The notes under the pieces: generated by a model | What the model saw: the letters and a program-made list of their open reading frames with translations, nothing else | The model's database searches: none | What the model was told of the DNA's origin: nothing | Translations under genes and position numbers: made by a program | Part shown: one piece after another, positions 7,057-64,000 of the stretch | Layout of the letters: each line of letters begins with the position of its first letter | Numbering within the stretch: position 1 is the first letter of the stretch | Assembly: GCA_977020255.1 (NCBI GenBank) | Contig: CDROCS010002739.1 | Span: 124,001 to 188,000 of the forward strand | Source of the DNA: Obrimoposthia wandeli | Lineage: Eukaryota | Length of the DNA stretch: 64,000 nucleotides | Reading direction: 5' to 3'

Positions 7057-9759
7057 TATAAATATATTTTGAGAATTATTTTTTCAGATAATTTGTTTAG
7101 AATTTTTTATATATTCTCAATCAAAGGTGTCATTTTATTGTTGAAAATCAATTCAAATTATTACAAAATAATTTATTATTTAATGAAACGAAAATAAAGT
7201 AGATTACTGACTGAATGAAGAGTGTTAACTTGCGAATTAACTTAGTACACCGGAATTATTTAGTGAACTTATTGCTTTCGAATATAAGGATGAACACGAA
7301 ACCGAAGTTAAAATAAAATACAGGGTGACAATAAAGGTAGAAATGTTTTTTAGCTATAAAAGTTTATTGAAGGTCGAATTATTTTGTTTTTCTGCATCAA
7401 AGGATTAATATTCAATTTTACATTTTTTAGAAAAAAATATTGAGCAAAAAGCCAAAGATGCAGCTTGGTAAGCAAATTTTTGAATTTTGTTTATGTTAAA
7501 TTTCATAAAAATAATTTGATTTTTAAAATTTGTACCTTGTCTTATTTTATAATAAATTACCTAAACGATCTTTACACAAACAATACCTTGATCGTAACTT
7601 AATAGTCAGACTCAGATATCGATCTTTTGCTTTGAACAAAAAATTGTGACTATTGGGCTTGTATATATTTAATTTGACTCATTTTTACTAAAACCACAAC
7701 ACAAGAAATAGTGGCATCAAACTAATTATATTAAAGTACAGGTTTTTAGGATACTTCTTTCCTTACTAAACGTTGAACAAATTTATTTCCCAATTTTAAT
7801 TATAGATATGTAATAAACACAGAATATTCAATTTATTTGATAATTACAAAAGTTCCATTAATATTTATCGAGTGAAAATTACATGATTCATAAGAAATTT
7901 GTGCAAATTTTACATCGTTATTGTAGAACTCTATTTTGTAACACATTATGAGCATAAGTATTGTATCAATCATGATTACAACTAATTTTTGTCTTTACGA
8001 CTTTTCTTCTCACGATCAATTTAATTCAACTCTAAAATGTTAACATATTTGATGGAAAATGTTCTACTATTTTCTAATTGTATTTGAATTTTTGCGATTG
8101 TAATTACTGCCTAGCCATTTGAATTCAAATCTGTAATAAAATGACCAGGTGAATTGACTCTTTCTTACTGTGAAAATAGGTGTACTAAAAAGTATGTTTA
8201 CACTCAACAATAATAGACAAACGAAATAAGCATAAAACCGCTATGATTTTAATAACATAAAAGAAACTAAGTCAATTAAAGAAACTTGGTAACTGTTAGA
8301 TCACGTTAACCCGTTAATTAAAATTTATTAATTTATAAAGAAATTTAAACCATTACATTTACCTTCAAAAAATAATTATCCTAAAATTTCGACTATAATG
8401 CACGTATAATATAATGAAAAACGTTATATTTGTTTAAATTTTATACTGGATGCGCTTTTTATTAAGTTTTTTTAATGCATCGAGATTCTTAAGGTGTGTA
8501 TTATTATCGGAATTTTATAGTAAATAAACATGAATTTAATTTCTATTTAAAATAACATACAAAATTAGCCTTTATTAAAATCAATATAAAAAGGAAGATT
8601 AGGACATCCAAATCTACCAAAAGAGCCTGTAAACGAAGCCAACCGAAAATATTGAATTTAGTGATTTTAGGTGCAGCTGCTTTAGAAGTTCTTGCATTAC
8701 AGCACCTTAAATTAGCTTTTCCTGGAATTTTTCGACAGGTTTGTGAAGCACAATACCTTGGTAAAATTAATTAACCGTCTCTGTAATGTCTGATTAATAA
8801 AACTTTTTAGTCCTGGCCAAAGACAGTGTGTTTTAAAATAATTTAATTAAAATGTCAAAAAATGTTTAAAACTAAGAAAATTGAGGCCATAATAAAGGCT
8901 AATTAATTTTGAACTTTATATGGTTACAATTAATTAAGAAAAATTTTGAGTTTCTTAGCGGAATTCTGTCTACACACCTAGAAATTCGATCATTTAAAAT
9001 TTCATTCAGCTAGAAAAGGAAGCCCAAAAGTTAGCAACAAACGAACATAGTCAGAAAATTTTGAAGGAGTCTAAGAATCTCTTGTAACCAGCACCAAGAG
9101 GCAGTGACAATGGAGAAGGCTAAACAAATTGCAATATCAATCGTGAACAATACGTGGGTTCTCATTAGGGAAGAATCAAAATAAGAAGCAGATCCATAAA
9201 CGAAAAAAAAACACATTTTTAAACGAAACGTAATCCCAAGAGAATTTAACGACATAATGAAAAAAAGTATTGAGTTATTAGTTCGTAAAAAAATCAACAA
9301 AAACTCGATTGAAGATAATATTGAATAAATACACCTGAATGCGGCGAAAATATCGAATAAATGATCACATATGAATCAATTATAGATAAGACAAAAAATC
9401 TTAAGTGATCAAAATAACAAGACAAAAATTGAATCAAATTAAAATCAATCAGAGATACTGGATTTAAAAAAAACAACTTTAAATATGTAGGACAGGTATA
9501 CTCTGAAGTGCCATGAGCAGTAACTTATGGTAGAGGAAAATTGTTAAAATGACCATTCATAAAAAAACTATATAAATATTCCGAAAACGATTGTCGGATC
9601 AAATTAATATAGACAGAATGAATTTAACTTTCAAATGTCATGGTAAATGTCAGGATGGTGAAAACTTTCCGATAGAAAGCACAAGAGTAGAAAACTAAAG
9701 TAATGTATGTATTTATAATCTCATTCGACACTAACGTTATTGAGGATATATACCTTTTC

Positions 9760-9863
9760 AAATTCAATATGGGAATAGTCAAATTCAATATGGGAATAGT
9801 CAAATTCAATATGGGAATAGTCAAATTCAATATGAGAATAGTCAAATTCATTATAGGAATATT
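9760..9863 (+). repeat. Left subterminal array, 21-bp unit AAATTCAATATGGGAATAGTC x4 plus one degenerate unit
   Basis: Units at 9760, 9781, 9802, 9823 and a partial unit at 9844. Confidence 0.95.
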
Positions 9864-9921
9864 ATTTAAATATAAATAAATTATTAATCAGAAATCATTA
9901 AAAATTTAAAAAAACCCTTAA

Positions 9922-10977
9922 ATGCCTAATCCTAGAATCAAGAAAGATGAGACCAAGGAAAAGAGAGCACAGATCCTTGCAGTTTATGCATCCGGCGGGG
10001 ATTGGAGGGCTTTGGCTGAAACATTAGGTGTAAAGTCCAGTACCTATTATAGGTGGATTAAAACCGGTGATGTACAAGACGCAAGAGGGGGAGTTCGTGT
10101 CCAAAAGATTTTTGAAACTCATGAATCATTTATGATAAATGAGATTGAAAAAAATCCCAGGGTTTCCCTCGAGGAGTTGACAGCACTTCTCAGAGGTGAG
10201 TATGATTTGGAAGTTACCAAAGAATGCGTGCGTCTACACCTTGACGCACATCTTTATACTCTCAAGGCAATACGTTATGAACCTGAAAGGGGGAATTGTC
10301 TTGAGAATAAAGAAAAAAGAAGGCTGTTCGCAGTTGATCTTTTAAACCACCAGTCAGGTACCCTTCCAATTCTTTTTATGGATGAAACGAATTTTAATAT
10401 TCACATCTCCAGGAAAGAAGGAAGATCAAGGAGGGGAACCAGGTGTACAGTGGTCACCAGTGGGTCGAGAGGGGCTAATGTACATCTAATAGGATGTATA
10501 GGGCCACTGGGCATGGTACACCATGAGATAAAAAGGGGATCGTTCAGGATGGACGCAGCTAATGAATGGATCAGGGTGTGTTTAAGGAAAGGCATGCAAT
10601 TACACCAAAGCAAGGTTGTCTTGGTAATTGACAATGCGCCTTGCCATTCCAGAATACAGGATGTTCTTGGCGAGGCCGAGTTTGAGGGAAATGTGATTTT
10701 AAGGCTGGCGCCTTATAGTCCTATGTTAAACCCCATAGAGCATGCTTGGTCCAAAATTAAAGCATCTGTGGAAAGGAGGTTAGCCGTTGAAATGCCCGGA
10801 ATTTTACGAGGAAATGGGCAAGGAGCTCTTACAACAACCGAGTTTCGTCTTCAGAAGCTTGAAGGGTTTGTTTCTGCCGCTTTGGCTGAAATTACTCCAT
10901 TTGTTTGCAACAATTTCATTGCATCTATTCAAAGATTACTGCCGGATGCATTGAATATGGTCAACATGACCTATTAA
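9922..10977 (+). CDS. IS630-like DD35E transposase (351 aa)
   Basis: N-terminal HTH; ILFMDETNF (D1), VIDNAPCH (D2), LAPYSPMLNPIEHAWS (E) with 35 residues between D2 and E; no stops or frameshifts. Confidence 0.93.
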   Translation: MPNPRIKKDETKEKRAQILAVYASGGDWRALAETLGVKSSTYYRWIKTGDVQDARGGVRVQKIFETHESFMINEIEKNPRVSLEELTALLRGEYDLEVTKECVRLHLDAHLYTLKAIRYEPERGNCLENKEKRRLFAVDLLNHQSGTLPILFMDETNFNIHISRKEGRSRRGTRCTVVTSGSRGANVHLIGCIGPLGMVHHEIKRGSFRMDAANEWIRVCLRKGMQLHQSKVVLVIDNAPCHSRIQDVLGEAEFEGNVILRLAPYSPMLNPIEHAWSKIKASVERRLAVEMPGILRGNGQGALTTTEFRLQKLEGFVSAALAEITPFVCNNFIASIQRLLPDALNMVNMTY

Positions 10978-11074
10978 TAAATTAAGCTGGACTAATTTTT
11001 ATTTTTATATTAATAAATTGAGCTGGACTAATTTTTATTTTTATAATACCTTTGTAAATTTTCATAATGCCTTT

Positions 11075-11221
11075 TACTATTCCCATAATGAATTTGACTA
11101 TTCCCATAATGAATTTGACTATTCCCATATTGATTTTGACTATTCCCATATTGAATTTGACTATTTCCATATTGAATTTGACTATTCCCATATTGAATTT
11201 GACTATTCCCATATTGAATTT
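11075..11221 (-). repeat. Right subterminal array, inverted 21-bp unit x7
   Basis: GACTATTCCCATATTGAATTT units at 11075, 11096, 11117, 11138, 11159, 11180, 11201. Confidence 0.95.
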
Positions 11222-13506
11222 GAAAAGGTATATATGAACTACTAGGGAATAATAAAAATTCCCAAATGAGTTAGTACGATCACGTTAACAATGTATGACA
11301 AGGAGTAGACTAAGAAAGTAAAATAGACACTGATACAGATTCAGTAGATGTAGACGCAACAGAGACTGTAAACAATCAGGTACTGAACAATCGTCTTCTA
11401 CAACCAGGAGAAGAAATCAAGAGCATATATTTAAGTGATCTAAAGAAGCTCACGAAGGTAAACAATCACAGTTTTAAACAAATTATACAGAAAGAAAAAA
11501 TCCTCCATCTGAATGATTTAGAAGAAACTTGCAAAGGGCCGAATAATGCTGTCACAGAACCAACAAGATATGAATGCGAATCTAAGACATAAATTCTAAG
11601 GCGGACCAGACGGAGACCCAGAAAGGAAAACTAGACACTGAAAGACATTTTGACGGACATCACCGATGAAAAAACTCTTACAAGATACATAGACAGAGGG
11701 ACTGAAATTATCGACGCACACGGTTTGGAGACAACAAGTAGTTCAATAAATACATTAGAATTGGTATGAAACATTTTAAAATCATTAAATGATAAAGCGT
11801 TTAAGTCGTAAAAAATGCCAAAGTGAAACATTAGTAAAAGTAATTAAAATACAAATGCCACAAATAAAACCACAAATAGATTTATTCGGGTATCCTACAG
11901 TAGTCGACCGAGGACACAATGGTAAAAAATCAATAATATTAAGTGACAAGCCCTCAAATAAAAATATTTTTCAACTGCCTTATCATATTTATTGTATAAA
12001 TTATCATAAGTCAATTATCATGTATATCAGGAAGCTGAATTAATTCAAACATAAGTTAAAGAATGCACAGTATAAATGAGCTATATCTTATCTTATCTTA
12101 TCTATATCGTATAAATGGTTAGTCGGAAAACATGTAAGACAGCTTTTCGTAACAGGACAACGATAATCAATTCACAGTATGATCCGATTGCTAGACAAGG
12201 AGTATGAAGATATGAAACGATAGTGAGAAAAGTCACATTAAAGCCTGACGGAGCTCGTACCATTGAAATTCGAAATATGCAAGGAATGACGGTAAAATTC
12301 GCTGAAGTCGAAGAGCGATAAACTTGAGCAGAGTCTTCCCAATCTTCTACCTACTCTTGGCTAATCAGGTCCATATATTGGGTTCTCTGTATCTCCCTCC
12401 TTCTGTTGCTGGTGCTGCTACTTCCACTGATTTTTGATTAATTAAGTCAATATATTGCGATGGTGGTGGTGTTCGTTACTGCATGTGATAGAGTTCTTCA
12501 TATAAGTGCTCCTCGAACACCACGTTCAAATCAATGTTTTTGTAGTGAGGCATAATGATGAGAAAATAATATTGACGAAGAACGAATGAGAATTGAGATA
12601 ATAATTAAATATCGTCAATGATAGCAGAGTATTCAAATATATTTTTCAAAAATTCATGGTACTTTGTTAAAAGGTTTTGTCTTTGTATGTAAGTGTCATG
12701 TGGGAAATGAAATAAAGTATTTATGTCAGTAAAGAAAGGGGAATTTGTGTGTCCTGATGAGGGACAAAATATTTATATATTTATTCAAAAATTTAAAGTA
12801 TTTTGTTAAAAGCTTCGTCCATAATTGTTGTTTTACATAACTATTCATATCTTCCTTTTCAAATAATTACAACAACAAAAACTTCTTCTGGAACCTTTGT
12901 ATTATAACTATATAACCAATTCATAAACTTTATAAAAAACAACAAATAATTTTTATCTAATCGAGCTTTTCTCAGTCTCTTATATACAAACGATGCTCAA
13001 ATCACTCAGATGAAAATCTTCATTTGCTGCATGCGCTGCTGGACAGAAAATCAATTTTGTAATTGATTTTTAAAAATTTTAATTGTATAGCCAGCAATGA
13101 CTAAAAACTAGTTTAAAACTCGTTCTTCTATACCCCCGTCTTTGACTTCACCGAGTCAACTCAAGAGAGGTATCGAGAACACAATTGCAGTAGCAAAACA
13201 TTAAAACACTTTACAAAAATTGTTGCATCTGATAATATTTGAATCCGTTGAGAGGCATAAGACAAACAAATTTATTATTTTTATTTTATTTTAAAAAACG
13301 GAACTCTGAGATTGTATTGCTGACAGCATCCTGATCAGAATGAAACTTCAGTTCAAACAAATTAACTTTCTGAAAAAAGGCAATCCATCCGCTGCAAAAT
13401 TGTGTGTCATACACCGCAAGGAACGTCCAGCCACTTGACCCTTCCGCTGAGACGTCTTTGACAAGGCACAGTTGCGATCTGGACCCCTAACCTTCAGTTA
13501 ACTAAC

Positions 13507-16500
13507 TCAACCAATACGACATAAATGTCGCAGCGCCATCTTCAAATCCCTTCCGTCGGTTAATACTGCAGCAATACGTTCCACTCCTTCCATTCCTTGT
13601 ACTATATCGACTATCCTTCCTATAGGAAATGCTCCACGTTCATTATTTCTATTCAAAACTAACACTAAGCTTCCTCTTTCCGCCAAACATTTCTCCATAA
13701 ACCATTTTGACGCATTCCTCACATTGGAACGATCTCCTCCAATCACCACGCCCAAACGTGAATAACTCTTGAATTCTTTTCCATCTCGCCTACAACCTTC
13801 CCAATGTATTTTTAAATGCAAAAAAAATAGCTGCTCCAATTAAAAAAATAATTTGGTGTCAAAGCTTTAGACTTCTTCTTGTCCATTGATTTTCTTCCAA
13901 TGGGTCGTGAATTCACCAAAGGCTCGACTTCTATTAATACCGTCACCAATTCCTCTTTGGTCACATCTACTTACTGTATAACTTTCTTCATTGCTATTTT
14001 ACTGATTTTACCATTGTTTCAAAAACACCACCAAAGTGAGCCGACCACAGAGGATTGAATACTCCTCTGATCTCGTTCTCTGCCAACTCTTTCTTTACTT
14101 TATAGCTGTCCATTACAAATTCTTTTACATCATTCACGACTCACACAAAATTTGTTCCATTATCATAAACAACAAACCCTGGTCGTCTTCTTCTTACAAA
14201 TATCTTAAAGGCTCTAAGAAATTCGTCCGTATCGAGACCATGGGCTACATCTACATCTATCGCTCTAACTAGTAAATACCTGAAAATACAAATATTTTTT
14301 CTCTCCTCTTTCCCCGATCTTGCACTGTCATGACTGGTTCTGTAAAATCAACTTCAACTCTTGCAAATGTTTTGAGAGGTTCTCTAAATCGGAACTGTGG
14401 CAATGCTGCCATTATTTGTGCCATTCTTACTGCTTTACGCCTTTTAACGCTTCGTATTGATTTTCTACATCACTAATTATTCGTCTCACCTTCGAAATCC
14501 AAAATTTAGCTTTTACCTCGTTTAGAACATGTAGCATACCACTGCAGTGCTTCAACGTCTCGTGAATTTCTTTTATAAACAACCTTGCTAAACTGCTCTT
14601 ATCGCACACAATAATCGGAAATCGTACATCATGACTTAAAAATTCAGAGTGGATAATTCTTGTATTACTTCTCAAAACACCATCATCGTCAAAAAAGGAG
14701 TAAACCTTTGTAAATCACTTAATTTTGGAATTGGCTTACTTTTGCTTATAAATCTTATTTCATCGCTAAAAAACTCATTCTTACAAATGAGTACAAATCT
14801 TGAAATCCAAGCTCTTACACATAGTAGGCGCATTAGACATGAATATATCTCTGGCTTGAAAAAAATTGTGTTTCCCACATACCCTCTAAGATTGTTTCTT
14901 ACTGGAATCCTTACAAAGATTTTTGCTTTATATCTTTCTTCTGAATTTTTGTTCTAAGTTCTGAACCTTTTGGCCACTGAGCAGCGCATTGCATTATGAA
15001 CTTCGGACCTTTCCACCACACTTGACACTTTGCTAAAACATCTAGAGACTCACCTCGAGACAGAATATCAGTCGCGTTATCCTTCGTTGGGAAATATTTT
15101 CAAATAAAAATATTTGTTTCACTCTGAATTGTTCACACTCTATTGGCAACAAACGGTTTGAACAATTTTCCTTGTTGTGATATACCCTAGATAACGTCCA
15201 TACTTTTAGTGGTGAAACGTTTGATCTGGCAGCAACAAATTCTAAACGGCTGATATTATTTGTCTGTCTTAAATAAGCTACCGATCTATATGCTTCTTTA
15301 GATGAGTCAAAAAAAACCGGTTCATAGGCTCATATTTCTAATTAAACATTGTGGTATATTAATTGTCTTTAAATTTGCACAGCCTACTATCCTGTTTATC
15401 GCTTTTCTGACAATTCTTTCTAAAACGTATTCATCCCATGCTACTCTCGATTCCCAAAGTCTTTGCATTATTATCTTTGCTGGGATAGTAACAGACCAAC
15501 AAAACCCATTGGATCAAAAACACGAGACAAGAAACCTACGAAATTTATTTTTGTTAACTTTTCAACCCTTGGTAACTCAACATTACATTTAAATACGTCT
15601 TCCTTCTGCCAACTCATATCCAATGCTTTTTCTGCCAAGTTCTCGTGATCTTCATTCTTCATATTTTGTGCTCTGTCCTCTTCAGGTATTTGTGCCAATA
15701 CGAATCTGTTAATCTTTGCTCACTTTCGCGCCACCATTCATGCTCTGTCCCATAATTGTTTAATTCTACAATCAGGCGCAATGCTTCTTTTTCCGTACGG
15801 ATGGAGTTCAGACTATCCTCTATATAGGTAGACTTTAGCACTGTCTTCACAGATTTCTACAAATTTTCCTGGTTGAATTCTGCATTTCTGTGTGATATCA
15901 ACTTAGTCAAGAATGGTGACGCATTAATTCCAAAACTTAAACGACAATATTCAGAAGTACAAACATCTCTCATATCGTCACGCAATAAAAATCAGTACCA
16001 CATACGATCTTCTGGTTTAAATGAAAACTGTAAATACATTTCTGATATGTCACACCAGTGCAATATCAAACTTACAGAAACGCAACAATATATCAAATAA
16101 ATCTCTCTGAAGTTTAGGTCCAGTTTATATCTTGTTATTTAAACAAACTCCTTGGCACTTTGCGGCAGCGTCAAATACTATTCAAACTTTCGTTGTTTCT
16201 TTAACTCTTCTTATTACTGAAATATAACTTTGTATCTTTCCTTTCTTCCTCATCGATTTTTCGTACATAAACCTTTTTGATATGATCTTCTATCGTTAAG
16301 ATGTATTCCATTTTCAGCTGTAAATGTCTATTAAGTCTACGTTCAATGCTATATAAACGAGTTCTAGCCATCTTCCAACTTAATTGTCTCGAGTGTCTTA
16401 TCCATGAGTTTCTTGTTATTAATCGACTGCTGCTCAAATGGGGAAATTGTTCCCAAAAGATTCATACTTGCTGCTCCAATCGAGTGTCGGCGTGAAATGT

Positions 16501-53400: not shown

Positions 53401-55189
53401 GTAACTTGTTTCCCGTGTTATTTATTTGGTATACAATTGATAGCTTTGGTTTTGGATATGTTTTAGTTCTTACTGTATTGTCTCAAAAATTGTCTAAAGG
53501 ATAATGTATTCTATATGCCTCGGTTATGTGTTGAATATTCTAGATAAATTATGTAGTCAAGTCTTTACTTATCAAAACTGTTATCCTCAAATGAATTCCT
53601 ATCTGAATCAGTACTTTATGATCGACTTTGTAAGGTGTTCAATACTAGATTAGAAAAACAGATTAAATCAAGTTATCGAAGGTTCACAATATTTTATTTT
53701 TAATATCAAATATAAAAACACTACTAATAATGATACTCATGTATACACAAAATACAAATATCACAAGGATAAACAACGTAAAATTCTTTTAAAAAATGTC
53801 TTCTTCTCCCGATGTGTCTGGACCTACTGTGTTTAGTGCCGTTTACAGGCTGATTTTATTTGACAAAACACACTGGGTGACAGTTAAGAAAGGCTAGGCT
53901 ATTAAGACAGGCTATTTGAATTAACCCCCGATTTTACAAAATATGTTATAAGAAATGACGATGGAACCGCTTACATGTCAAAGGTTAAAATAGTATTTTA
54001 TTAATTTTATGCAAGACAAAATAATCTACTCCCCGTAATCCGGTTGATCTGTATTCAGTCTAGGTAGTCCGGGAGGTTGTTCCGAGAATTGTTTTGTCCG
54101 AAGCTTGAGTTCGTGGTTGTTTGGGTTCTTTTCTCTTCCTCTAAGATTTCTACAATTTTTTTTGTCAATCTCTCCATGTCTTCTTCTTCTTGTTATACAA
54201 TTAGCAGGTCCAATGGAATCAGGACCAATCACAATGAATTCTTTCTGGTTCTTGGGACCAGAATTCTTTGCTGACTCGTGTGCTTTTCTATTGGCTTACA
54301 AATTCAATTCTTATTTTTGTTGTGGTGTCTCAGGTGACTTATATCTGTTGACTCAGAGGTGACCGTAGATTAATTAATTATTAAATACGTCTCCATTTTT
54401 TGTTTAAATATTCCTATATTGTACCCTTCTTATTTTATTTAATTTTAATTTAATCTTTCTGGGTGATGAAATGTCTTTGCCAGGACTATAAATAAAGCCA
54501 TTTAATTTAATATTTTTCATTTTAATTCGTCCGATTCTGGACCTTAACACATGTTATGACTGTTATTTCTTTGCATCGGCTATATTAATCGATAATATTA
54601 CGTCAAAGTTTTCACTACCAATTTTTCATAATATAATTTTACTTTCATTTGATTCTTTATATTAATTATATGTTAGGATTAGGTTTTGATTAGAATTAAA
54701 TAAATAATTGTTTTTATAGTAAAATGAAAATCCTTGAAAGCAAGGTTAAGAATTAAATAAATTTTAAAATCAAAGTTAAATTATTAAAATTAAAATGGGA
54801 ATAAAAATTAGAGGACCACGAAGGTCGTGTGTGGTGCGCTAGATGTGTATATAAGTTAAGACCTCAAAAAAGAAGGGCCGCAAAAATAAATAGAAAAGGA
54901 AAGAAGATTATTGCGAAAATTGAAATTAAGAAATAAGAATCACCATCAGCGAAATCAAGTGAGAATCACCATTAGCGCCAGACAACTATTCCGGATACAG
55001 ATCATCCATTAGCGCCAGACCACTATCCCGGATTCTGAACAAGTTCTCCGAAGTCAGCAGCCTAATCGGAAAGGTAATAGCACTTAGTTAAGTGATTACT
55101 AATTACTTTTAATTTACAGAAACCCGCGATTCTACTAACGACACTCGGCGAGGAGAAAGGAAATTTGCTATAAATAGCAACTACATTAA

Positions 55190-55333
55190 CCAACGAGTAC
55201 AGAAAAGCGAAAATTATAAATTGTACCAACGAGTACAGAAAAGCGAAAATTATAAATTGTACCAACGAGTACAGAAAAGCGAAAATTATAAATTGTACCA
55301 ACGAGTACAGAAAAGCGAAAATTATAAATTGTA
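55190..55333 (+). repeat. 36-bp tandem repeat x4
   Basis: CCAACGAGTACAGAAAAGCGAAAATTATAAATTGTA, four identical copies. Confidence 0.97.
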
Positions 55334-55372
55334 TCCAACGCGCATAGAAAGTAAAGATTTTTCATAAGTACA

Positions 55373-55504
55373 AATTGATTACTCTGCCAGAAGAGATCTA
55401 TCGTCAAGTGATCAACAGCGGAAAAGAACTTCGCAGAGAATTGATTACTCCGCCAGAAGAGATCCATCATCAAGTGATCAACAGCGGAGAGGGAATTCGC
55501 AGAG
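55373..55504 (+). repeat. 66-bp tandem repeat x2
   Basis: AATTGATTACTC(T/C)GCCAGAAGAGATC...TTCGCAGAG at 55373 and 55439. Confidence 0.9.
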
Positions 55505-55568
55505 GAATCAGACCGCGGAAAGGACAGAACCACTTCCAGTAACGCAAATAGGTGAGACGAGAGGTGAA

Positions 55569-56760
55569 AGTAAAGATTTTGAATCAGACAGTAAAGATTT
55601 TGAATTAGAAAGTAAAGATTTTGAATTAGACAGTAAAGATTTTGAATTAGAAAGTAAAGATTTTGAATTAGAAAGTAAAGATTTTGAATTGAACAGTAAA
55701 GATTTTGAATTAGAAAGTAAAGATTTTGAATTAAACAGTAAAGATTTTGAATTAGAAAGTAAAGATTTTGAATTAAACAGTAAAGATTTTGAATTAGAAA
55801 GTAAAGATTTTGAATTAAACAGTAAAGATTTTGAATTAGAAAGTAAAGATTTTGAATTAAACAGTAAAGATTTTGAATTAGAAAGTAAAGATTTTGAATT
55901 AAACAGTAAAGATTTTGAATTAGAAAGTAAAGATTTTGAATTAGACAGTGAAGATTTTGAATTAGAAAGTAAAGATTTTGAATTAGAAAGTAAAGATTTT
56001 GAATTAGAAAGTAAAGATTTTGAATTAGAAAGTAAAGATTTTGAATTAAACAGTAAAGATTTTGAATTAGAAAGTAAAGATTTTGAATTAAACAGTAAAG
56101 ATTTTGAATTAGAAAGTAAAGATTTTGAATTAGACAGTGAAGATTTTGAATTAGAAAGTAAAGATTTTGAATTAAACAGTAAAGATTTTGAATTAGAAAG
56201 TAAAGATTTTGAATTAAACAGTAAAGATTTTGAATTAGAAAGTAAAGATTTTGAATTAGACAGTAAAGATTTTGAATTAGAAAGTAAAGATTTTGAATTA
56301 AACAGTAAAGATTTTGAATTAGAAAGTAAAGATTTTGAATTAGACAGTGAAGATTTTGAATTAGAAAGTAAAGATTTTGAATTAAACAGTAAAGATTTCG
56401 AATTAGAAAGTAAAGATTTTGAATTAAACAGTAAAGATTTTGAATTAGAAAGTAAAGATTTTGAATTAGACAGTAAAGATTTTGAATTAGAAAGTAAAGA
56501 TTTTGAATTAGACAGTAAAGATTTTGAATTAGACAGTGAAGATTTTGAATTAGAAAGTAAAGATTTTGAATTAAACAGTAAAGATTTTGAATTAGAAAGT
56601 AAAGATTTTGAATTAGACAGTAAAGATTTTGAATTAGAAAGTAAAGATTTTGAATTAGACAGTAACGATTTTGAATTAGAAAGTAAAGATTTTGAATTAG
56701 ACAGTAAAGATTTTGAATTAGAAAGTGAAGATTTTGAATTAGACAGTAAAGATTTTGAAT
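55569..56760 (+). repeat. 21-bp minisatellite, about 57 units
   Basis: AGTAAAGATTTTGAATTA(GAA/AAC/GAC); no spacers. Confidence 0.98.
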
Positions 56761-56933
56761 AAAGTACATATTGATTTGGAATTACTGAATTTAAATTATT
56801 AGAGTAAGGACTCAAATAAACTAACCGACCTTAGCGTAAAATCGATACGTGGTTCATCCCCACTGGTGTAGAGACTTGCATAAGTCTTAGGAATTTTTAC
56901 CATACTTTTTAGAAAATACGTACGTAAACGTAT

Positions 56934-57170
56934 TGTTGTGTTTTAGTTTAGTGTGTTACCAATAAACGATTTCCTACATTAGAACACGTTGTTTTAAACC
57001 CTTCAGATTAAGAGACGTCAAACCAAACACCTTCAGATAAGCAATAGAGATAGGCAACTATAACACTAAGTAGGCCACGACCAACTTTAAGACCTGCTTC
57101 TATTCGAACTCACGTTGGGGCCCTCCGCACATAAGAGGATCTATACAAGTCTCGTATAGAAACCCCAACA
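56934..57170 (+). repeat. Solo LTR (237 bp), same family as the 60221 LTR
   Basis: TGTTG...CAACA termini, roughly 85-90% identical by eye to 60221-60455; no PBS after and no PPT before; TSD not clean (GTAT/TATA). Confidence 0.85.
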
Positions 57171-57639
57171 TATATGTACTTTTATTAATGTTGTTCTATC
57201 GCATTTTGTTAATGTCACTTTATGACTTTATGCTATGTCAAGGAATCTGTGTTCAGGATAACGTGAGTTTGTCTTTCGGGCCCCCCCCCCCCCCGAAGAA
57301 CCAGCGCCAGAATCTTTTTTCTGCAAATTTCTGTCAAAATCTTTTGAATATGCTACTTTTCGGACAAATTTAGACGATTCGTTTGAAAAATTCAGTCAAT
57401 ATTCGGTCATTTTCGGTCATTTTCGGACATTTTTAGACGGATAAAACCGTGTGTCTTTCGGGCCACCTCGATTACTGAGGCTATTTGAGTGACTTTCAGG
57501 TAAATTTTGAAATATTTCCGGGTAGATTTCCCACGTGTCTATAGGGCCAAGGCAAATTTACAGGCAAAAATTTGAATATTGAGGCCTTTTAAGGGATTTT
57601 ATTTTGAAACACATAATGTTAAGTAAATCTTTTTCCCAA

Positions 57640-58829: not shown

Positions 58830-60220
58830 CCCAGATTAAAAGACATAAATGTAATAGAAGTAATAATAGAAACACAACTTAAAATTCGTAACAGAACACA
58901 ATATGTAATATTAGGGCACATACAATTAAATTAGACAAAAGATAATATTTTGAACCGTCTAAGAACTTAATAATTAAAACAATGAACTTCCGATCGTATG
59001 TTCAATAGGATATGCAATTATAATAAACTACCTGTAAGATTAATGAATCCAGCAAATGATATTATTGTACAAGAATAAGCAAATTAATCAGACTAGACGT
59101 GCTACACATAGAAGGAAATTAGATAAACAAGTTGAAGTGACGGATAATTACGAGGAAATAAAAATATAGTCTACGAGATTTAATCAACAACAAAAATTTA
59201 AATTTCTTGAATTAATTAATAGATTTCCAAAATAAATAGAATCAATACGATTTGCGAGAAACACCAGTAATTAAACACACAATACCTTTAACTGAAAACA
59301 AAGTTGTACGTAAACGCTCATACAGAGTACCGTTACACCAACAAGGATAAGTAAAATAGCAATTCGACACTATGTTAAAAGCAAGAGTAGTCAGACCGAG
59401 TTTCTCACCTTTATCAGCACCAGTGGTGCTAGTCCGCAAAAATGATGGAAAGACGTGATTCTGCATCGATTTCCGCGATTCAAACAAAATAACTAAAAAA
59501 TACGTGTAAAAAATGAAATTCATAGAATCGAAAAAATATTAGATAAATTAGGAAACTCGGGTTATTTTACAACATTACATCTCCAAAGTGGTTATTGACA
59601 GATCGAAATAGAGGAGGAAGACAAACACAAAACAGTTTTTTTCCTGCAGAGAAGGATTGTACGTGAGTGAAAAGATGCCTTTCAGCAACATTTCAGCGAT
59701 GCATGGATTTTGTGTTAGCAATAGACATATATAATAATTTTCTCAAATTCTTTTGATGAACTTTTTAAAAACAAATTAATTGTATTTTAAAGGTTAGAAA
59801 ATGCTAAACTTAAAGTTAAATCAACAAAGTGTGAATGGGACAAAAAAAGTAACATTCCTAGGTCACATAGTTTCGAAAGAGGGGATCAGACCTGATCCTG
59901 GTAATATTGAGAAAGTAACAGAACACCTCGTACCGACAACCGTTAAACAAATTAAAAAGTTTTCTAGGTTTAGTTAATTATTATCGACGTTTTGTGAAAC
60001 AGTTTTCAGAGATAGCAGGACCAATAAGAAAGCTCATAAAGAAAGACGAGACATTCGTCTGGGGAGCTGAAGCACAAAAAGCATTTGAGGAATTAAAACA
60101 AACTTTATTCAAGCTCCCATTTGAGCTTTTCCTGACATAAACAAACAATGTATATGACTGATGCTGGTAACTACGCTTTAGGAGCAGTACTAAGTCAAGA
60201 AGATGACGAAGAAAAAGTAT
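58830..60220 (+). mobile_element. Decayed Gypsy pol (RT and start of RNase H)
   Basis: RKRSYRVP, SPLSAPVVLVRKNDGKT*FCIDFR, LQSGY*QIEIEEEDKHKT, HFLGHIVS, TDAGNYALGAVLSQ; truncated by the LTR at 60221. Confidence 0.9.
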
Positions 60221-60455
60221 TGTTGTGTTAAATCTAGTGTGTTAACAATAAACGATTTCCTACATTAGAAAGCATTGTTTTAAACCCTTCAGACTAAGAG
60301 ACATCTAGACAAACACCTTCAGATAAGTAATTGAGACAGGCAACCATAACATTAAGTAGGCCACGACCAACTTTAAGACCTGCTTCTACAGAACTCACGT
60401 TGGGGCCCTCCACATTCAAGAGGATCTATATAAGTTTCATATAGAAACCCCAACA
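60221..60455 (+). repeat. 5' LTR (235 bp) of a young Gypsy-type element
   Basis: TGTTG...CAACA termini, followed by PBS, leader and intact gag. Confidence 0.92.
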
Positions 60456-60463
60456 TATTAAAG

Positions 60464-60482
60464 TGGTGCCACGAGTGAGGAT
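60464..60482 (+). promoter_or_regulatory. Primer-binding site
   Basis: TGGTGCCACGAGTGAGGAT, 8 nt after the LTR; resembles the complement of a tRNA-Leu 3' end (tRNA identity is inference). Confidence 0.7.
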
Positions 60483-60521: not shown

Positions 60522-60846
60522 AAACTGAGAATAAGTTACAGAAGAAATAAGTAAATTGAGAATAAGTTACAGAAGAAATAAGTAAATTGAGAATAAGTTT
60601 CAGAAGAAGAAAATATATGTAAATTGAGAATAAGTGTCAGAAGAAGAAAATATAAGCAAATTGAGAATAAGTTTCAGAAGAAGAAGATATAAGCAAATTG
60701 AGATAAGAGAATTGATAAGTTTTGAGAAATCGAGTAGATTTGTTCCTCGAGTTGAGAATTTGATAAGTTTTGAGAATCGAGTGGATTTGTTCCTCGAGTT
60801 AAGTAAAGTTGATAAGTTTTGCGAGTCGAGTGGATTGTTACTCGAG
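60522..60846 (+). repeat. Tandem repeats in the retroelement leader
   Basis: About 5 copies of a 31-38 bp unit AAATTGAGAATAAGTT(A/T)CAGAAGAA..., then 3 copies of a ~48-bp unit TTGATAAGTTTTGAGAATCGAGTGGATTTGTTCCTCGAG. Confidence 0.85.
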
Positions 60847-61293
60847 GTAATTAATTGAATAGGTTAAGTCGAGAGACGTGTCATCGAACTAATTAAGAGA
60901 TATAAGAAATCGTAAAATAAGAATTGTGAAATAAGATAAAGTAATAAGTAAATTGATATCGTAAACGAATACATAATTGATAAGACAACGGATAATAGAA
61001 AAGGACCCGCGTTTAATACTAGAAGACAAAGTCAGATTCCCCAGGAAGAGATAAATAATAATAAATTTAACCGAATTGTACAGGTTCCCCAAACAGATAA
61101 CAAGACTAGAATCAAAGAAAACGTATCAGAAAGAGACGTGAATCAATCAGCAGTTTCAACCGACAGTTTTGATCTGATTGAGTTGTTTGGTGACATAAAC
61201 CCAGAAGAATTTGAAATTGCCAATCCAGTAGAGGTTGAGGAAGTTCAATTGAATAATATTGAAGAAATAGTTGAGGAGGATATAATTGAAAAT

Positions 61294-64000
61294 ATGGCTC
61301 AACCAGGAGCTCAAGCAGATAATAATGCAGGAAATAATGTAGGTGACATGAATGCAGAACAGTTGGCACTAGCCTTAAATGCGACGTTGAGACCCAACTT
61401 TTCGGGATCATTGCAGATTACAAAGTTTAAAGGAGATGAGGAAAGTATTTGTGACTTCCTCGCAGAATATTCGAGTTGTGCAGATGTTCAAGGATGGAAC
61501 GATAGAGAAAAATGTGTCCGTGTACAGGCACATTTAACCGGATTAGCACTTGAAGTGTATAAACATTTGACAGAAGCAGAACGTTTAGATTGGGCAACGT
61601 TGGAAAATGCTTTTATTGGAAAATTGGTATTGGGAGATTTAGCAAAAGTGAATAAGCGAATCATGAGAGAACGGAAACAGAAACATGACGAAGGCGTGAA
61701 TGAATACGCGTATGTTTTGAGAACCTTGGCCGCAAGAGCGTACCCAAGAAGAGTAATGAGAAATCAGGACGGTATTCCTGTAGCTCCAGAAGCACAAGTA
61801 GCGGAAAATAACCGGAACCAAAATGAAATGGCAGAAGTTTTGTTAGACATATTTAGAGGAGGACTGAAAAAAGATATTAAAGTGTTATTAGCAGTATCGG
61901 ACACGAATGATTTTGATAACGCCGTACGAAAGGCGAGAGAGATTGAGAAAAATATAAAAAATAACGCAGCAATGGCAATTTACGCAATGACCGCAGGCGA
62001 TGACGATAAGACAAAAGTATTCGTGAATAAAACAGAACCGAGTAATTTTCAGAATCGAAATTATGGACAAAATAAGTTTGAAAAAGGAGATGAATCCAGT
62101 AACGGAAATAGATATAATTTCCGAAATAGGAATCGAGATGATTCGAGAGGTAGAAATAATAGTGAGTCTTGGAACAGGAATCGAGATGATTCAAGAGGTA
62201 GAAATAGTAATGATTCGTGGAATAGAAATAGAGATGATTCCAGGAATAGATTTAGTAGAGATAATTCAGGAAATCGCCAACCTTGGAGAGGGGACGATAG
62301 GAATTACAACGCAAACAGAGGAGAGCGAAGTGACTCTCGATTTGGAAATAATACAGGAAGTAGTGACGGAAGATTCAATAATCGAGGAAGCGGCTTTGAA
62401 TCGAATTTCCGAAGAAGTGATTTTAGAGGACGATATGATAATAGACAGAATAGTCGTCGAGTACAGTTCGAAGATGAACAAAATAAGATAGATATTCGAG
62501 GGAGAATAATGTGTTATACGTGTAAACAAATGGGTCATTATTCGAGAGATTGTACGAGAAGTAAAGAGTTCGGAGCTAACAGATTTGGAAATAATAATTT
62601 CGGTAATAATAATTTTGGAAATAATTATAGAGGATATAATTCATCCCCGCCATGGAATAGAGGTGGTGGATATACTCCGCAGCAATGGAGACCGAATAAT
62701 CAGTATACAGATAGACAACAGTCACCAGGTAGATACAATAACTATGCAGACAGACAGCAAGGAGTTGAGAGATACAATAATTACGTAGGACAGCAAGGAG
62801 CTGAGAGATATAATAATTCCGGTCGATATAATAATAATAATGTTGACAAGACAAATAGTCGCGAGAGTTCGCCGAAACCGAAAGGAAATTTTAGTTATGT
62901 AAACGATGACAGCGATAGGAATCGCGAGACCGAGCTTCGACGCGAAATAGATTTTGAAGATAGTGATAGTAAATTTGAACGAATGTTGGGAATAATTAAA
63001 GATTCCCCTCACACAAAGTTGGCGAATTCATCTACGTTGTCGAAACACGAAAAAAGTCTACACTCGAGAGAAGAGATGAATGATTTAATGAACCAAATAC
63101 TAGAAGCGTATGAGACACCAATAGAGAAAACGTGTAACGCACAACCTATGACTGATCATATAGAAGCAGCAAGAAATGCTACGAGTATGGAAAATGTAAA
63201 AAAGATAATTAGTGAAGCTAAGGAGACGTTGAATCAACCGTTAGATGAAACGAGTGAAGCTCCAGAAGTTTTGGCCAAATTGCAAACAATTAAAGCGCAC
63301 AGATTGGAAGAAGTGCGAGCAGAATTGGTCAAACATAGTCATAATAACTTGGGCTACAAAGAAGTATCACGAGGATTATTGAAAGGATATTGTCGTTACG
63401 TACAGAGATCAAACCAAAAAGGAACGATGGAAATTTCTCTTAGATTAATTTCCGGACAGATAATACATGAAAAACTTAACGTGTATCAAACAATGAAAAC
63501 TATTCGAAAAAAGTTGGCCGAGAAACTTGAAATTGATGGAATGAACATGTTGTTCCATTATAAAGGAAGATCACTAGATGATGAAGACGTACCAGTCGAG
63601 TGTGGATATCCGATAGGAAACGAATTAGAGGAAAAAATTGATGTCATCACTGTAGGACGTCAGGAGTTAGTAGATAATGAAGGATTAACTGAGATATTAA
63701 ACTCGGCGTTAAAAATGATAAAAACGCCTATAGAAATTTTAGACAGTTCAAGCGAAAGCGGAGATAATGATGTAGCTGAAGCTTGGAACAAGACATCCAC
63801 ACCAGAACCGTACGTAGCTGAATTACAAGACGTGGAATTAGAAAATGAGTTGACGACTCCAGTGGTCGAAGTACCACCAGAACCAGAGATAATTCAAATC
63901 AGACAAGATGAAGTCACGGATACAGCTAACCAAGTGAGACAAAACGAAAACGTAAACCAACTAGTAGGAGAAGACGAAATCTCCGAGATTGTAGATTTGG
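61294..64000 (+). CDS. Gag (or Gag-Pol) polyprotein, open to window edge (at least 902 codons from first ATG)
   Basis: I read every codon 60952-64000 and found no stop; capsid-like FLAEYSSCADVQGWNDREK...RKQKHDEGVNEYAYVLRTLAARAY...FRGGL; CCHC knuckle CYTCKQMGHYSRDC at 62512-62553; Ubl-like segment 63427-63657. Confidence 0.92.
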   Translation, partial: MAQPGAQADNNAGNNVGDMNAEQLALALNATLRPNFSGSLQITKFKGDEESICDFLAEYSSCADVQGWNDREKCVRVQAHLTGLALEVYKHLTEAERLDWATLENAFIGKLVLGDLAKVNKRIMRERKQKHDEGVNEYAYVLRTLAARAYPRRVMRNQDGIPVAPEAQVAENNRNQNEMAEVLLDIFRGGLKKDIKVLLAVSDTNDFDNAVRKAREIEKNIKNNAAMAIYAMTAGDDDKTKVFVNKTEPSNFQNRNYGQNKFEKGDESSNGNRYNFRNRNRDDSRGRNNSESWNRNRDDSRGRNSNDSWNRNRDDSRNRFSRDNSGNRQPWRGDDRNYNANRGERSDSRFGNNTGSSDGRFNNRGSGFESNFRRSDFRGRYDNRQNSRRVQFEDEQNKIDIRGRIMCYTCKQMGHYSRDCTRSKEFGANRFGNNNFGNNNFGNNYRGYNSSPPWNRGGGYTPQQWRPNNQYTDRQQSPGRYNNYADRQQGVERYNNYVGQQGAERYNNSGRYNNNNVDKTNSRESSPKPKGNFSYVNDDSDRNRETELRREIDFEDSDSKFERMLGIIKDSPHTKLANSSTLSKHEKSLHSREEMNDLMNQILEAYETPIEKTCNAQPMTDHIEAARNATSMENVKKIISEAKETLNQPLDETSEAPEVLAKLQTIKAHRLEEVRAELVKHSHNNLGYKEVSRGLLKGYCRYVQRSNQKGTMEISLRLISGQIIHEKLNVYQTMKTIRKKLAEKLEIDGMNMLFHYKGRSLDDEDVPVECGYPIGNELEEKIDVITVGRQELVDNEGLTEILNSALKMIKTPIEILDSSSESGDNDVAEAWNKTSTPEPYVAELQDVELENELTTPVVEVPPEPEIIQIRQDEVTDTANQVRQNENVNQLVGEDEISEIVDL

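What the first reader, a model, noticed from the sequence alone, without database searches (positions are those of the whole stretch)
63427..63657. Ubiquitin-like domain embedded in an intact retrotransposon Gag polyprotein
Seen: MEISLRLISGQIIHEKLNVYQTMKTIRKKLAEKLEIDGMNMLFHYKGRSLDDEDVPVECG aligns without gaps to ubiquitin 1-60, with identities at M1, I3, G10, I13, T22, K29, K33, I36, G47, L50 and D52 and conservative core matches (V5/L, V17/L, I23/M, V26/I, I30/L, L43/F, F45/Y, K48/R). The end is SUMO-like (D.P.E.G) and there is no terminal diglycine. It lies about 290 residues after the CCHC knuckle in a frame open for more than 1000 codons, with no protease D[ST]G motif seen yet. Knowledge: Gag budding and turnover engage ubiquitin/ESCRT and SUMO pathways, and ubiquitin inserts are known in pestivirus polyproteins; I do not recall an integral Ubl in Gypsy Gag. 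Inference: a captured Ubl module for proteasome/ESCRT recruitment, decoying of SUMO-dependent TE silencing, or processing. This is the best candidate for a new system in the window. The ORF track missed it because the ORF has no stop in the window.
Basis: partly seen in the sequence, partly recalled or inferred. Interest (0 to 1): 0.82.

Follow-up and report, generated by a model that had tools for sequence, protein, structure and literature searches.

The report
Ubiquitin-like domain inside a retrotransposon polyprotein
A jumping-gene copy cut off by the window's end encodes, after its RNA-binding zinc knuckle, a small and very diverged ubiquitin/SUMO-like domain; I found no published precedent for this, but I found no intact related copy, so its conservation and role stay untested.

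Summary
Bases 63427-63657 lie in a frame open for 1016 codons (60952 to the window end). They encode about 80 residues that match the ubiquitin superfamily weakly but consistently by every method used: Pfam ubiquitin E 7e-4 (below the curated cut-off), weak matches to solved ubiquitin, ISG15, SUMO, NIP45 and RAD23 chains, and a single library hit that is a protein made of Rad60 SUMO-like repeats. A low-confidence AlphaFold model has beta-grasp topology, and its 50 best structural matches are all ubiquitin-like proteins. There is no terminal diglycine, so it is an integral domain and not a conjugatable modifier.

The setting is the 5' part of an LTR retrotransposon: an LTR-like repeat, a primer-binding-like site, a repeat-rich leader, a weak Retrotrans_gag match and one CCHC knuckle. 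The element is inserted into an older decayed pol gene.

"Intact", "Gypsy" and "in Gag" cannot be shown, because protease, RT and integrase would lie beyond base 64000. No relatives turned up in any collection. The only other trace is a decayed relic of the same domain at 9534-9677.

My preferred reading is a built-in, non-covalent docking module, possibly paired with a SUMO-interaction-like acidic motif 24 residues downstream. This is a new variant of a known kind, of moderate interest.

The parts
60213..60458 (+). 5' LTR-like repeat of the element (bounds approximate to about 10 bases; TGTTG...CAACA termini inside it)
   Evidence: 88% identical to a second copy at 56926-57173. It directly interrupts an older RNase H-like reading frame.
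60464..60480 (+). Primer-binding-site-like motif starting with TGG, 5 bases after the end of LTR homology
   Evidence: Read directly from the sequence. The match to a tRNA 3' end was not tested.
60522..60854 (+). Leader with two tandem-repeat arrays (31-37 nt, about 5 copies; 47-48 nt, 3 copies)
   Evidence: Tandem Repeats Finder.
61294..63999 (+). Long reading frame of the element from its first ATG. The frame is open from 60952 and runs off the window end, so the 3' bound is unknown.
   Evidence: 1016 open codons, against 26-134 stops in the other frames.
61528..61764 (+). Capsid-like Gag region (weak)
   Evidence: Pfam Retrotrans_gag PF03732, E 0.0025, 18.4 bits, below the cut-off of 24.1. 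The AlphaFold model is all-helical but at pLDDT 44, so it is not usable.
62040..62900 (+). Asn/Arg/Gly/Tyr-rich low-complexity stretch on both sides of the knuckle, with in-frame tandem repeats
   Evidence: Composition by 50-residue blocks; coding tandem repeats at 62125-62257, 62583-62640 and 62731-62816.
62512..62553 (+). CCHC zinc knuckle (nucleocapsid-type)
   Evidence: Pfam zf-CCHC, E 9e-6, 26 bits, above the cut-off; motif position.
63418..63672 (+). Ubiquitin-like (beta-grasp) domain; the finding's 63427-63657 is its core
63730..63765 (+). SUMO-interaction-motif-like stretch: four residues with a hydrophobic x hydrophobic hydrophobic pattern, then eight residues of which seven are Asp/Glu/Ser. 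It begins 24 residues after the finding's stated end of the domain (19 after the modelled fold) and opens a long acidic tail.
   Evidence: Motif scan of the frame. It is the only one of 11 hydrophobic cores with such an acidic/Ser run. That it is an interaction motif is inference.
9534..9677 (+). Decayed relic of the same domain (one part; one in-frame stop; flanks unrecognisable)
   Evidence: tblastn 36% identity over 53 residues, E 5e-4 in the window. phmmer of the domain against all 1416 six-frame pieces gives E 3.2e-5, and the next best is 0.89.

Best explanation
The segment encodes a real but strongly diverged, non-conjugatable ubiquitin-like domain. It is an integral part of the single long reading frame of an LTR retrotransposon in an animal genome. 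It sits after the capsid-like region, the CCHC nucleocapsid knuckle, a low-complexity stretch and a helical linker, and before whatever follows (protease expected, beyond the window). I take it to be an accessory docking module. It cannot be attached to other proteins, and with no diglycine it would not be released by host deubiquitinases, so it would act by non-covalent binding. The partner is more likely of the SUMO/SIM type than a ubiquitin receptor. The helix of the domain is strongly basic, the Ile44 position of ubiquitin is not kept, the best library relative is a SUMO-like repeat protein, and an acidic SIM-like motif follows 24 residues downstream. That motif could pair with the domain within one polyprotein or between polyproteins, or the two could plug the particle proteins into the host's SUMO-dependent machinery. 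Shown: the frame, the knuckle, the LTR context and the ubiquitin-superfamily likeness. Inferred: that the domain folds, that it is kept by selection, and what it binds.
For: Ubiquitin-superfamily signal from independent methods: Pfam, PDB sequences, the exhaustive library search with Pfam typing of its only hit, a shuffle control 0/2000, hhalign 89%, and single-sequence AlphaFold topology with all-Ubl Foldseek hits in PDB and in viral models. Element context: LTR pair, nested insertion into an RNase H-like remnant, zf-CCHC, weak Retrotrans_gag, and a 1016-codon open frame. A second, decayed copy of just this domain lies 54 kb away. This shows the domain is part of repeated DNA, and that it stays recognisable where its flanks do not. 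SIM-like motif and acidic tail. His at the Ile44 position (alignment).
Against: Every single-domain score is marginal and below Pfam's curated cut-off. The strong E-values come from summed repeats. The model has pLDDT 57, and four of five models are below 46. Pfam Rad60-SLD does not match, and the C-terminal half alone is not clearly SUMO-like. No sister element was found, so constraint on the domain is untested. The SIM-like motif is short and lies in an acidic region where such patterns arise easily. The partner and effect are pure inference.
Confidence: 0.55

Rival explanations
1. Ddi1-like arrangement: the ubiquitin-like domain is the N-terminal part of the protease-bearing product, so that a retropepsin follows it just beyond the window. 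That is the order seen in the cellular Ddi1/Ddi2 proteins. The domain would then steer or regulate the protease, or the unit would reflect exchange with a host Ddi1-type gene.
For: The domain lies far (291 residues) behind the knuckle, where the protease is expected next, and the frame is still open at the window end. Ddi1/Ddi2 carry a retroviral-like protease, which PMC7072860 describes as originating from retrotransposons or retroviruses. That they also carry a ubiquitin-like domain N-terminal to that protease is my own knowledge, supported only by a cited title in that paper's reference list.
Against: No D[ST]G occurs in the 114 residues after the domain. No Ddi1 or Ddi2 chain appears among PDB sequence matches up to E 10. 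No helical Ddi1-type domain was detected after it.
Confidence: 0.2
2. Passenger: a fragment of a host ubiquitin-like gene picked up by this lineage and carried without use to the element.
For: No relatives of the element with or without the domain were found, so nothing shows selection. Retroelements do pick up host sequence (established knowledge; ubiquitin inserts in pestivirus polyproteins came back as fold matches).
Against: There is no close donor: only one hit in 1.84 billion representatives, at 21-31% identity, so the capture, if any, is old. The frame is kept open through and beyond the domain. A second, decayed copy keeps similarity in this domain only.
Confidence: 0.15
3. Chance resemblance: the segment is part of a linker and does not fold as a ubiquitin-like domain.
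For: The match is sub-threshold at Pfam (19.7 against 25.4 bits). Across 64 kb in six frames and 24,736 families, about one match of this score to some family is expected by chance (my arithmetic). The model is of low confidence.
Against: Different methods all return the same superfamily and nothing else: Pfam, PDB sequences, the sole library hit, Foldseek on PDB and on viral models. No shuffle reaches the score. The predicted order of strands and helices is that of a beta-grasp.
Confidence: 0.15
4. Ubiquitin mimic, the reader's first idea: the domain stands in for ubiquitin attached to Gag and recruits ubiquitin receptors of the sorting (ESCRT) or proteasome pathways.
For: The ungapped likeness to ubiquitin 1-52. 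That Gag proteins of retroviruses use ubiquitin and ESCRT is established knowledge.
Against: The position of Ile44, centre of ubiquitin's receptor-binding patch (established knowledge), is His in HMMER's alignment. No envelope gene or budding motif is visible in the part of the element that the window holds.
Confidence: 0.1

Closest known systems
Integral SUMO-like domains of the Rad60/Esc2/NIP45 family (Pfam Rad60-SLD)
   Same: A ubiquitin-fold domain built into a larger protein, with no diglycine, acting by non-covalent binding. Members combine such domains with SUMO-interaction motifs in one chain (established knowledge). NIP45 came back as a weak named hit, and the only library hit is a protein of Rad60-SLD repeats.
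   Different: Those are cellular genome-stability proteins, whereas this domain sits in a retrotransposon frame. Pfam Rad60-SLD itself does not match it.
Ddi1/Ddi2 (ubiquitin-like domain followed by a retroviral-type aspartic protease)
   Same: A ubiquitin-like domain in one chain with retroelement-type machinery. The order 'Ubl, then protease' is possible here (PMC7072860).
   Different: No protease is visible in the window. No Ddi1 chain is among the sequence matches. Here the domain follows Gag and a zinc knuckle.
Ubiquitin inserts in pestivirus polyproteins and viral ubiquitin genes
   Same: A ubiquitin fold inside a viral-type polyprotein. These were the top fold matches among viral models.
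   Different: By established knowledge those inserts are near-identical copies of host ubiquitin and end in the diglycine that host enzymes cut. This domain is about 21% identical to ubiquitin and has no diglycine.
Accessory domains of LTR retrotransposons (for example chromodomains of chromoviruses, dUTPase)
   Same: An extra host-type protein module carried in frame in the element's polyprotein (established knowledge).
   Different: The module here is a ubiquitin-like domain placed between the nucleocapsid and the expected protease. I found no description of such a case in four literature searches.
Host UBL-UBA shuttle UBQLN2 acting on Gag-derived PEG10 and RTL8
   Same: Links Gag-like proteins of Ty3/Gypsy descent with ubiquitin-like domains and the proteasome (titles and abstracts listed: PMC12772957, 10.1101/2021.04.21.440788).
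   Different: There the ubiquitin-like domain is on the host factor, not in the Gag-like protein.

Membership tests
Ubiquitin superfamily (beta-grasp ubiquitin-like domains) | Match to a ubiquitin-like family profile at the curated threshold | tested here: not met
   PF00240 scores 19.7 bits, E 7e-4, against a cut-off of 25.4. It is consistent, but sub-threshold.
Ubiquitin superfamily (beta-grasp ubiquitin-like domains) | Strand-strand-helix-strand-strand-(short helix)-strand topology | tested here: inconclusive
   The best single-sequence AlphaFold model shows this order, but at pLDDT 57.
Ubiquitin superfamily (beta-grasp ubiquitin-like domains) | Structural match to solved ubiquitin-like proteins | tested here: inconclusive
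   The 50 best Foldseek matches are all NEDD8, SUMO, ubiquitin or ISG15, but at E about 4e-3 and TM 0.4-0.5, from a low-confidence model.
Conjugatable modifiers (ubiquitin, SUMO, NEDD8, ISG15) | C-terminal diglycine exposed or exposable by processing | tested here: not met
   There is no GG at or after the last strand, and the frame runs on.
SUMO-like domain (Rad60-SLD, PF11976) | Match to the Rad60-SLD profile | tested here: not met
   Not reported up to E 10. Only the indirect likeness to a protein made of such repeats supports it.
LTR retrotransposon | Long terminal repeats at both ends with target-site duplication | not testable with these tools
   A 5' LTR-like repeat with a second 88% copy in the window is present. 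The 3' end lies beyond base 64000.
LTR retrotransposon | Primer-binding site next to the 5' LTR | tested here: inconclusive
   A TGG-starting motif lies 5 bases after the LTR homology. There is no tRNA in the window to compare.
LTR retrotransposon Gag | Capsid-like domain and CCHC nucleocapsid knuckle | tested here: inconclusive
   zf-CCHC is met (E 9e-6). Retrotrans_gag is only at E 0.0025, below the cut-off. No PDB match and an unusable model.
Ty3/Gypsy lineage | Pol order protease-RT-RNase H-integrase and RT phylogeny | not testable with these tools
   Pol is outside the window, and no relatives were found to stand in.
Ddi1-like Ubl-retropepsin proteins | Retropepsin with D[ST]G downstream of the ubiquitin-like domain | not testable with these tools
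   There is none in the 114 residues left in the window. The sequence beyond is not available.
Pestivirus-type ubiquitin insert | Near-identity to host ubiquitin, ending in diglycine | tested here: not met
   21% identity over 52 ungapped residues and no diglycine.

The most novel reading that the evidence does not exclude
A lineage of animal LTR retrotransposons carries its own SUMO-like domain plus a SUMO-interaction-like motif in the Gag-Pol precursor. The pair would either link precursors to each other during assembly or mimic a SUMO-modified protein towards the host, which uses SUMO in silencing transposons. Alternatively, the domain directly precedes the protease and preserves in a mobile element the Ubl-retropepsin arrangement known from cellular Ddi1.
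Probability: 0.25. Interest if true: 0.8.

Novelty: new variant of a known kind. Interest (0 to 1): 0.5.

Why it matters
LTR retrotransposons and retroviruses depend on the host's ubiquitin and SUMO systems, but as far as I could find they borrow them and do not encode a ubiquitin-fold domain in Gag-Pol. An element that carries its own non-conjugatable ubiquitin-like domain would be a new kind of accessory module. If a protease follows directly, it would also bear on the open question of how the cellular Ddi1 family (ubiquitin-like domain plus retroviral-type protease) relates to mobile elements. At present this rests on one truncated copy and one relic, so it is a lead and not an established system.

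Tried and rejected
Relatives of the element:
- Three word-index protein searches found nothing: the whole frame, the capsid-like part with long candidates, and the capsid-like part with shorter candidates.
- The exhaustive search with 62902-63999 found only the SUMO-like repeat protein P0001.
- Two metagenome scans and one viral scan confirmed nothing.
- Exact look-ups of six complete window ORFs found none on record, so the source genome seems absent from the collections.

Other checks that led nowhere:
- Rfam and tRNA scans of the window were empty, so I could not name the organism or test the primer-binding site.
- The AlphaFold model of the capsid-like region is too poor to use, so I ran no fold search on it.
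- The helical region before the domain and the acidic tail after it gave only chance-level matches.
- Subfamily (SUMO-like or ubiquitin-like) is unresolved. The C-terminal half alone gave one chance hit (a methyltransferase), then RAD23 and NIP45 at E about 1.
- The relic alone matches no family or solved structure, and its flanks match no other part of the frame.

Readings rejected:
- A host gene of the Mpe1/RBBP6 type (ubiquitin-like DWNN domain plus zinc knuckle). The idea came from a reference seen. No DWNN match was reported and the order of domains is reversed.
- LTR A and LTR B as the two ends of one element. The sequence after LTR A has no primer-binding-like site, and the sequence before LTR B is mid-pol.

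I did not build an alignment-based structure model from distant ubiquitin-like proteins.
Full report
**1. What is in the sequence**

They lie in a frame with no stop from 60952 to the last full codon of the window (63999). That is 1016 codons, with the first ATG at 61294. The other five frames over 61294-63999 carry 26 to 134 stops. The ORF list omits the frame because it runs off the window.

One CCHC knuckle lies at 62512-62553 (Pfam zf-CCHC, E 9e-6, above the cut-off). The domain starts 291 residues later. The frame has no D[ST]G and the domain has no terminal diglycine.

**2. Is the likeness more than chance?**

Each score is weak, but all point the same way.

- Pfam ubiquitin (PF00240) scores 19.7 bits, E 7e-4, on the 77-residue piece. 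The curated cut-off is 25.4 bits, and the whole protein gives E 0.03. Over 64 kb in six frames and 24,736 families, a score of this size to some family is expected about once by chance, so it cannot stand alone.
- Among solved structures, the matches up to E 10 are, apart from two monomethylamine methyltransferase chains, all ubiquitin, ubiquitin-fusion, ISG15, SUMO, NIP45 and RAD23 chains. The best single-domain E-values are 6e-4 to 4e-3. The 1e-9 rows are polyubiquitin chains in which nine 5-bit matches are added up.
- The exhaustive search of 1.84 billion representatives with 62902-63999 returned one protein, P0001, with its best stretch on the domain. Pfam types P0001 as nine Rad60-SLD/ubiquitin repeats. 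Its E of 3.7e-16 is again a sum over near-identical repeats. One repeat is worth about 20 bits.
- A profile I built from eight of those repeats gives the domain 19.6 bits. None of 2000 shuffles of the domain exceeds 8.7. hhalign gives 89% probability over 34 columns.
- AlphaFold without an alignment gives pLDDT 57 for the best model, and the other four are below 46. The order of elements is that of a beta-grasp, over 63418-63672.
- All 50 top Foldseek matches in the PDB are NEDD8, SUMO1/2, ubiquitin or ISG15 (E about 4e-3, TM 0.4-0.5). Among viral models, the top matches are mostly ubiquitin inserts of pestivirus polyproteins and ubiquitins of giant viruses and baculoviruses.

I put the chance that this is a true ubiquitin-fold domain at about 0.8. 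The subfamily stays open. Pfam Rad60-SLD does not match, and the C-terminal half alone gives only E about 1 to RAD23 and NIP45.

**3. The setting**

A repeat of about 246 bases at 60213-60458, with TGTTG...CAACA termini, has an 88% identical copy at 56926-57173. Five bases after it comes a TGG-starting motif at 60464-60480 that looks like a primer-binding site. An 830-base leader with two tandem-repeat arrays follows, and then the ATG.

The N-terminal region gives a sub-threshold Retrotrans_gag match (E 0.0025) at about 61528-61764. The knuckle is flanked by an Asn/Arg/Gly/Tyr-rich low-complexity stretch with in-frame tandem repeats. A helical-looking region without matches follows, then the domain, then a strongly acidic tail to the window end.

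Directly upstream of the LTR lies a decayed pol remnant of another element (59240-60228), broken by several stops and several frame changes. I count at least six stops and at least four frame changes. Its last stop-free piece, which abuts the LTR, matches the RNase H-like domain of reverse transcriptases (RT_RNaseH_2, E 7e-5). The element is therefore a younger insertion nested in an older one.

The window also holds a Pao-type remnant on the minus strand. Since BEL/Pao elements are known only from animals (established knowledge), this points to an animal genome. Protease, RT and integrase of the element in question would lie beyond base 64000. For that reason 'intact', 'Gypsy' and 'in Gag' cannot be shown.

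**4. Relatives**

No search found any relative: three word-index protein searches, the exhaustive search, two metagenome scans and one viral scan. Exact look-ups of window ORFs also failed, so the source genome appears not to be in these collections.

The one exception lies within the window. At 9534-9677 (+) there is a decayed stretch with one in-frame stop that matches the domain at 36% identity over 53 residues. Against all 1416 six-frame pieces it scores E 3.2e-5, and the next best is 0.89. Its flanks match nothing else in the frame, and alone it matches no family. It shows that the domain belongs to repeated DNA of this genome. It also hints that the domain stays recognisable longer than its surroundings.

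**5. How it most likely works**

With no diglycine and the frame running on, the domain cannot be a modifier, and I would not expect host deubiquitinases to cut it out. It has to act as a built-in binding module. Three observations lean towards a SUMO-type partner and away from a ubiquitin receptor:

- In HMMER's alignment the place of ubiquitin's Ile44 is His.
- The helix of the domain is rich in Lys and Arg.
- Twenty-four residues after the domain comes a hydrophobic four-residue core followed by eight residues of which seven are Asp/Glu/Ser (63730-63765). It is the only one of 11 hydrophobic cores in the frame with such a run. This is the textbook form of a SUMO-interaction motif (established knowledge of the motif's consensus).

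Integral SUMO-like domains combined with such motifs are known from the Rad60/Esc2/NIP45 family. My preferred reading is a docking module that pairs with this motif, within or between precursors, or that connects the precursor with the host's SUMO-dependent machinery. I give 0.55 to the overall statement that this is a real domain, belongs to the element and acts as a binding module. I give much less to any specific partner.

The rivals are:

- a Ddi1-like Ubl-protease unit (0.2; it needs the sequence beyond the window);
- an unused passenger (0.15);
- chance resemblance (0.15);

**6. Comparison and novelty**

Accessory modules in LTR-retrotransposon polyproteins are a known kind. Ubiquitin inserts in pestivirus polyproteins and ubiquitin genes of large DNA viruses are also known, but those are near-copies of host ubiquitin.

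Five full-text searches found no description of a ubiquitin-like domain encoded in an LTR-retrotransposon Gag or Gag-Pol. The nearest literature concerns SUMO sites in errantivirus Gag (PMC3383448), the retroelement origin of the Ddi1/Ddi2 protease (PMC7072860), and host UBQLN2 acting on PEG10 and RTL8. The library is limited to open papers, so absence there is not proof.

I rate this a new variant of a known kind with interest 0.5. It is a real oddity, but it rests on one truncated copy and one relic, with marginal scores and no test of constraint.

**7. Slips and rule-keeping**

- While surveying decayed regions, my scripts printed raw frame translations with stop marks. These outputs show where the breaks lie. 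I do not repeat those places here.
- I built no joined, repaired, consensus or ancestral sequence.

Noticed in passing
window 9534-9677 (+): A decayed relic of the same ubiquitin-like domain (36% identity over 53 residues, one in-frame stop). It lies 68 bases before the inverted repeat of a DNA transposon, and its flanks are unrecognisable.
   Followed up: partly
window 9746-11244: A Tc1/mariner-type DNA transposon with an open 351-residue transposase (9922-10977; Pfam DDE_3 E 5e-19, HTH_23). It has long inverted ends made of 21-base tandem repeats (arms about 9746-9868 and 11015-11244, up to 96% complementary).
   Followed up: partly
window about 13510-15329 (-), perhaps further: A remnant of a BEL/Pao-type retrotransposon pol on the minus strand (Peptidase_A17 E 5e-6, weak Integrase_H2C2, DUF5641 E 5e-8). 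The strongly negative GC skew over 12-18 kb fits this. It points to an animal genome.
   Followed up: partly
window 55189-56760: A large minisatellite block: 36-base unit, 4.2 copies; 66-base unit, 2 copies; and a 42-base unit (21-base sub-period), 28.5 copies at 96% identity. It is open in several frames on both strands and gives spurious ORFs of 357-527 residues.
   Followed up: no
window 56926-57173: A second copy of the element's LTR-like repeat, 88% identical. No primer-binding-like site follows it. It is probably a solo LTR or the end of another copy. I could not settle a target-site duplication.
   Followed up: partly
window 59240-60228 (+): A decayed pol remnant (RT to the start of RNase H) of an older retroelement, broken by at least six stops and at least four frame changes. 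It is cut off by the insertion of the element under study.
   Followed up: partly
window 60522-60854: The leader of the element holds two tandem-repeat arrays (31-37 bases, about 5 copies; 47-48 bases, 3 copies) between the primer-binding-like site and the ATG.
   Followed up: no
window 62040-62900: Asn/Arg/Gly/Tyr-rich low-complexity sequence on both sides of the zinc knuckle, built partly from in-frame tandem repeats of 48, 30 and 36 bases. This prion-like composition swamped the first word-based protein search.
   Followed up: no
window 63730-63765: A SUMO-interaction-motif-like stretch (hydrophobic core plus a Ser/Asp/Glu run), starting 24 residues after the finding's stated end of the ubiquitin-like domain (19 after the modelled fold), at the start of a long acidic tail.
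   Followed up: partly
window about 57280-57310: A run of 14 C in the sequence that follows the second LTR copy.
   Followed up: no
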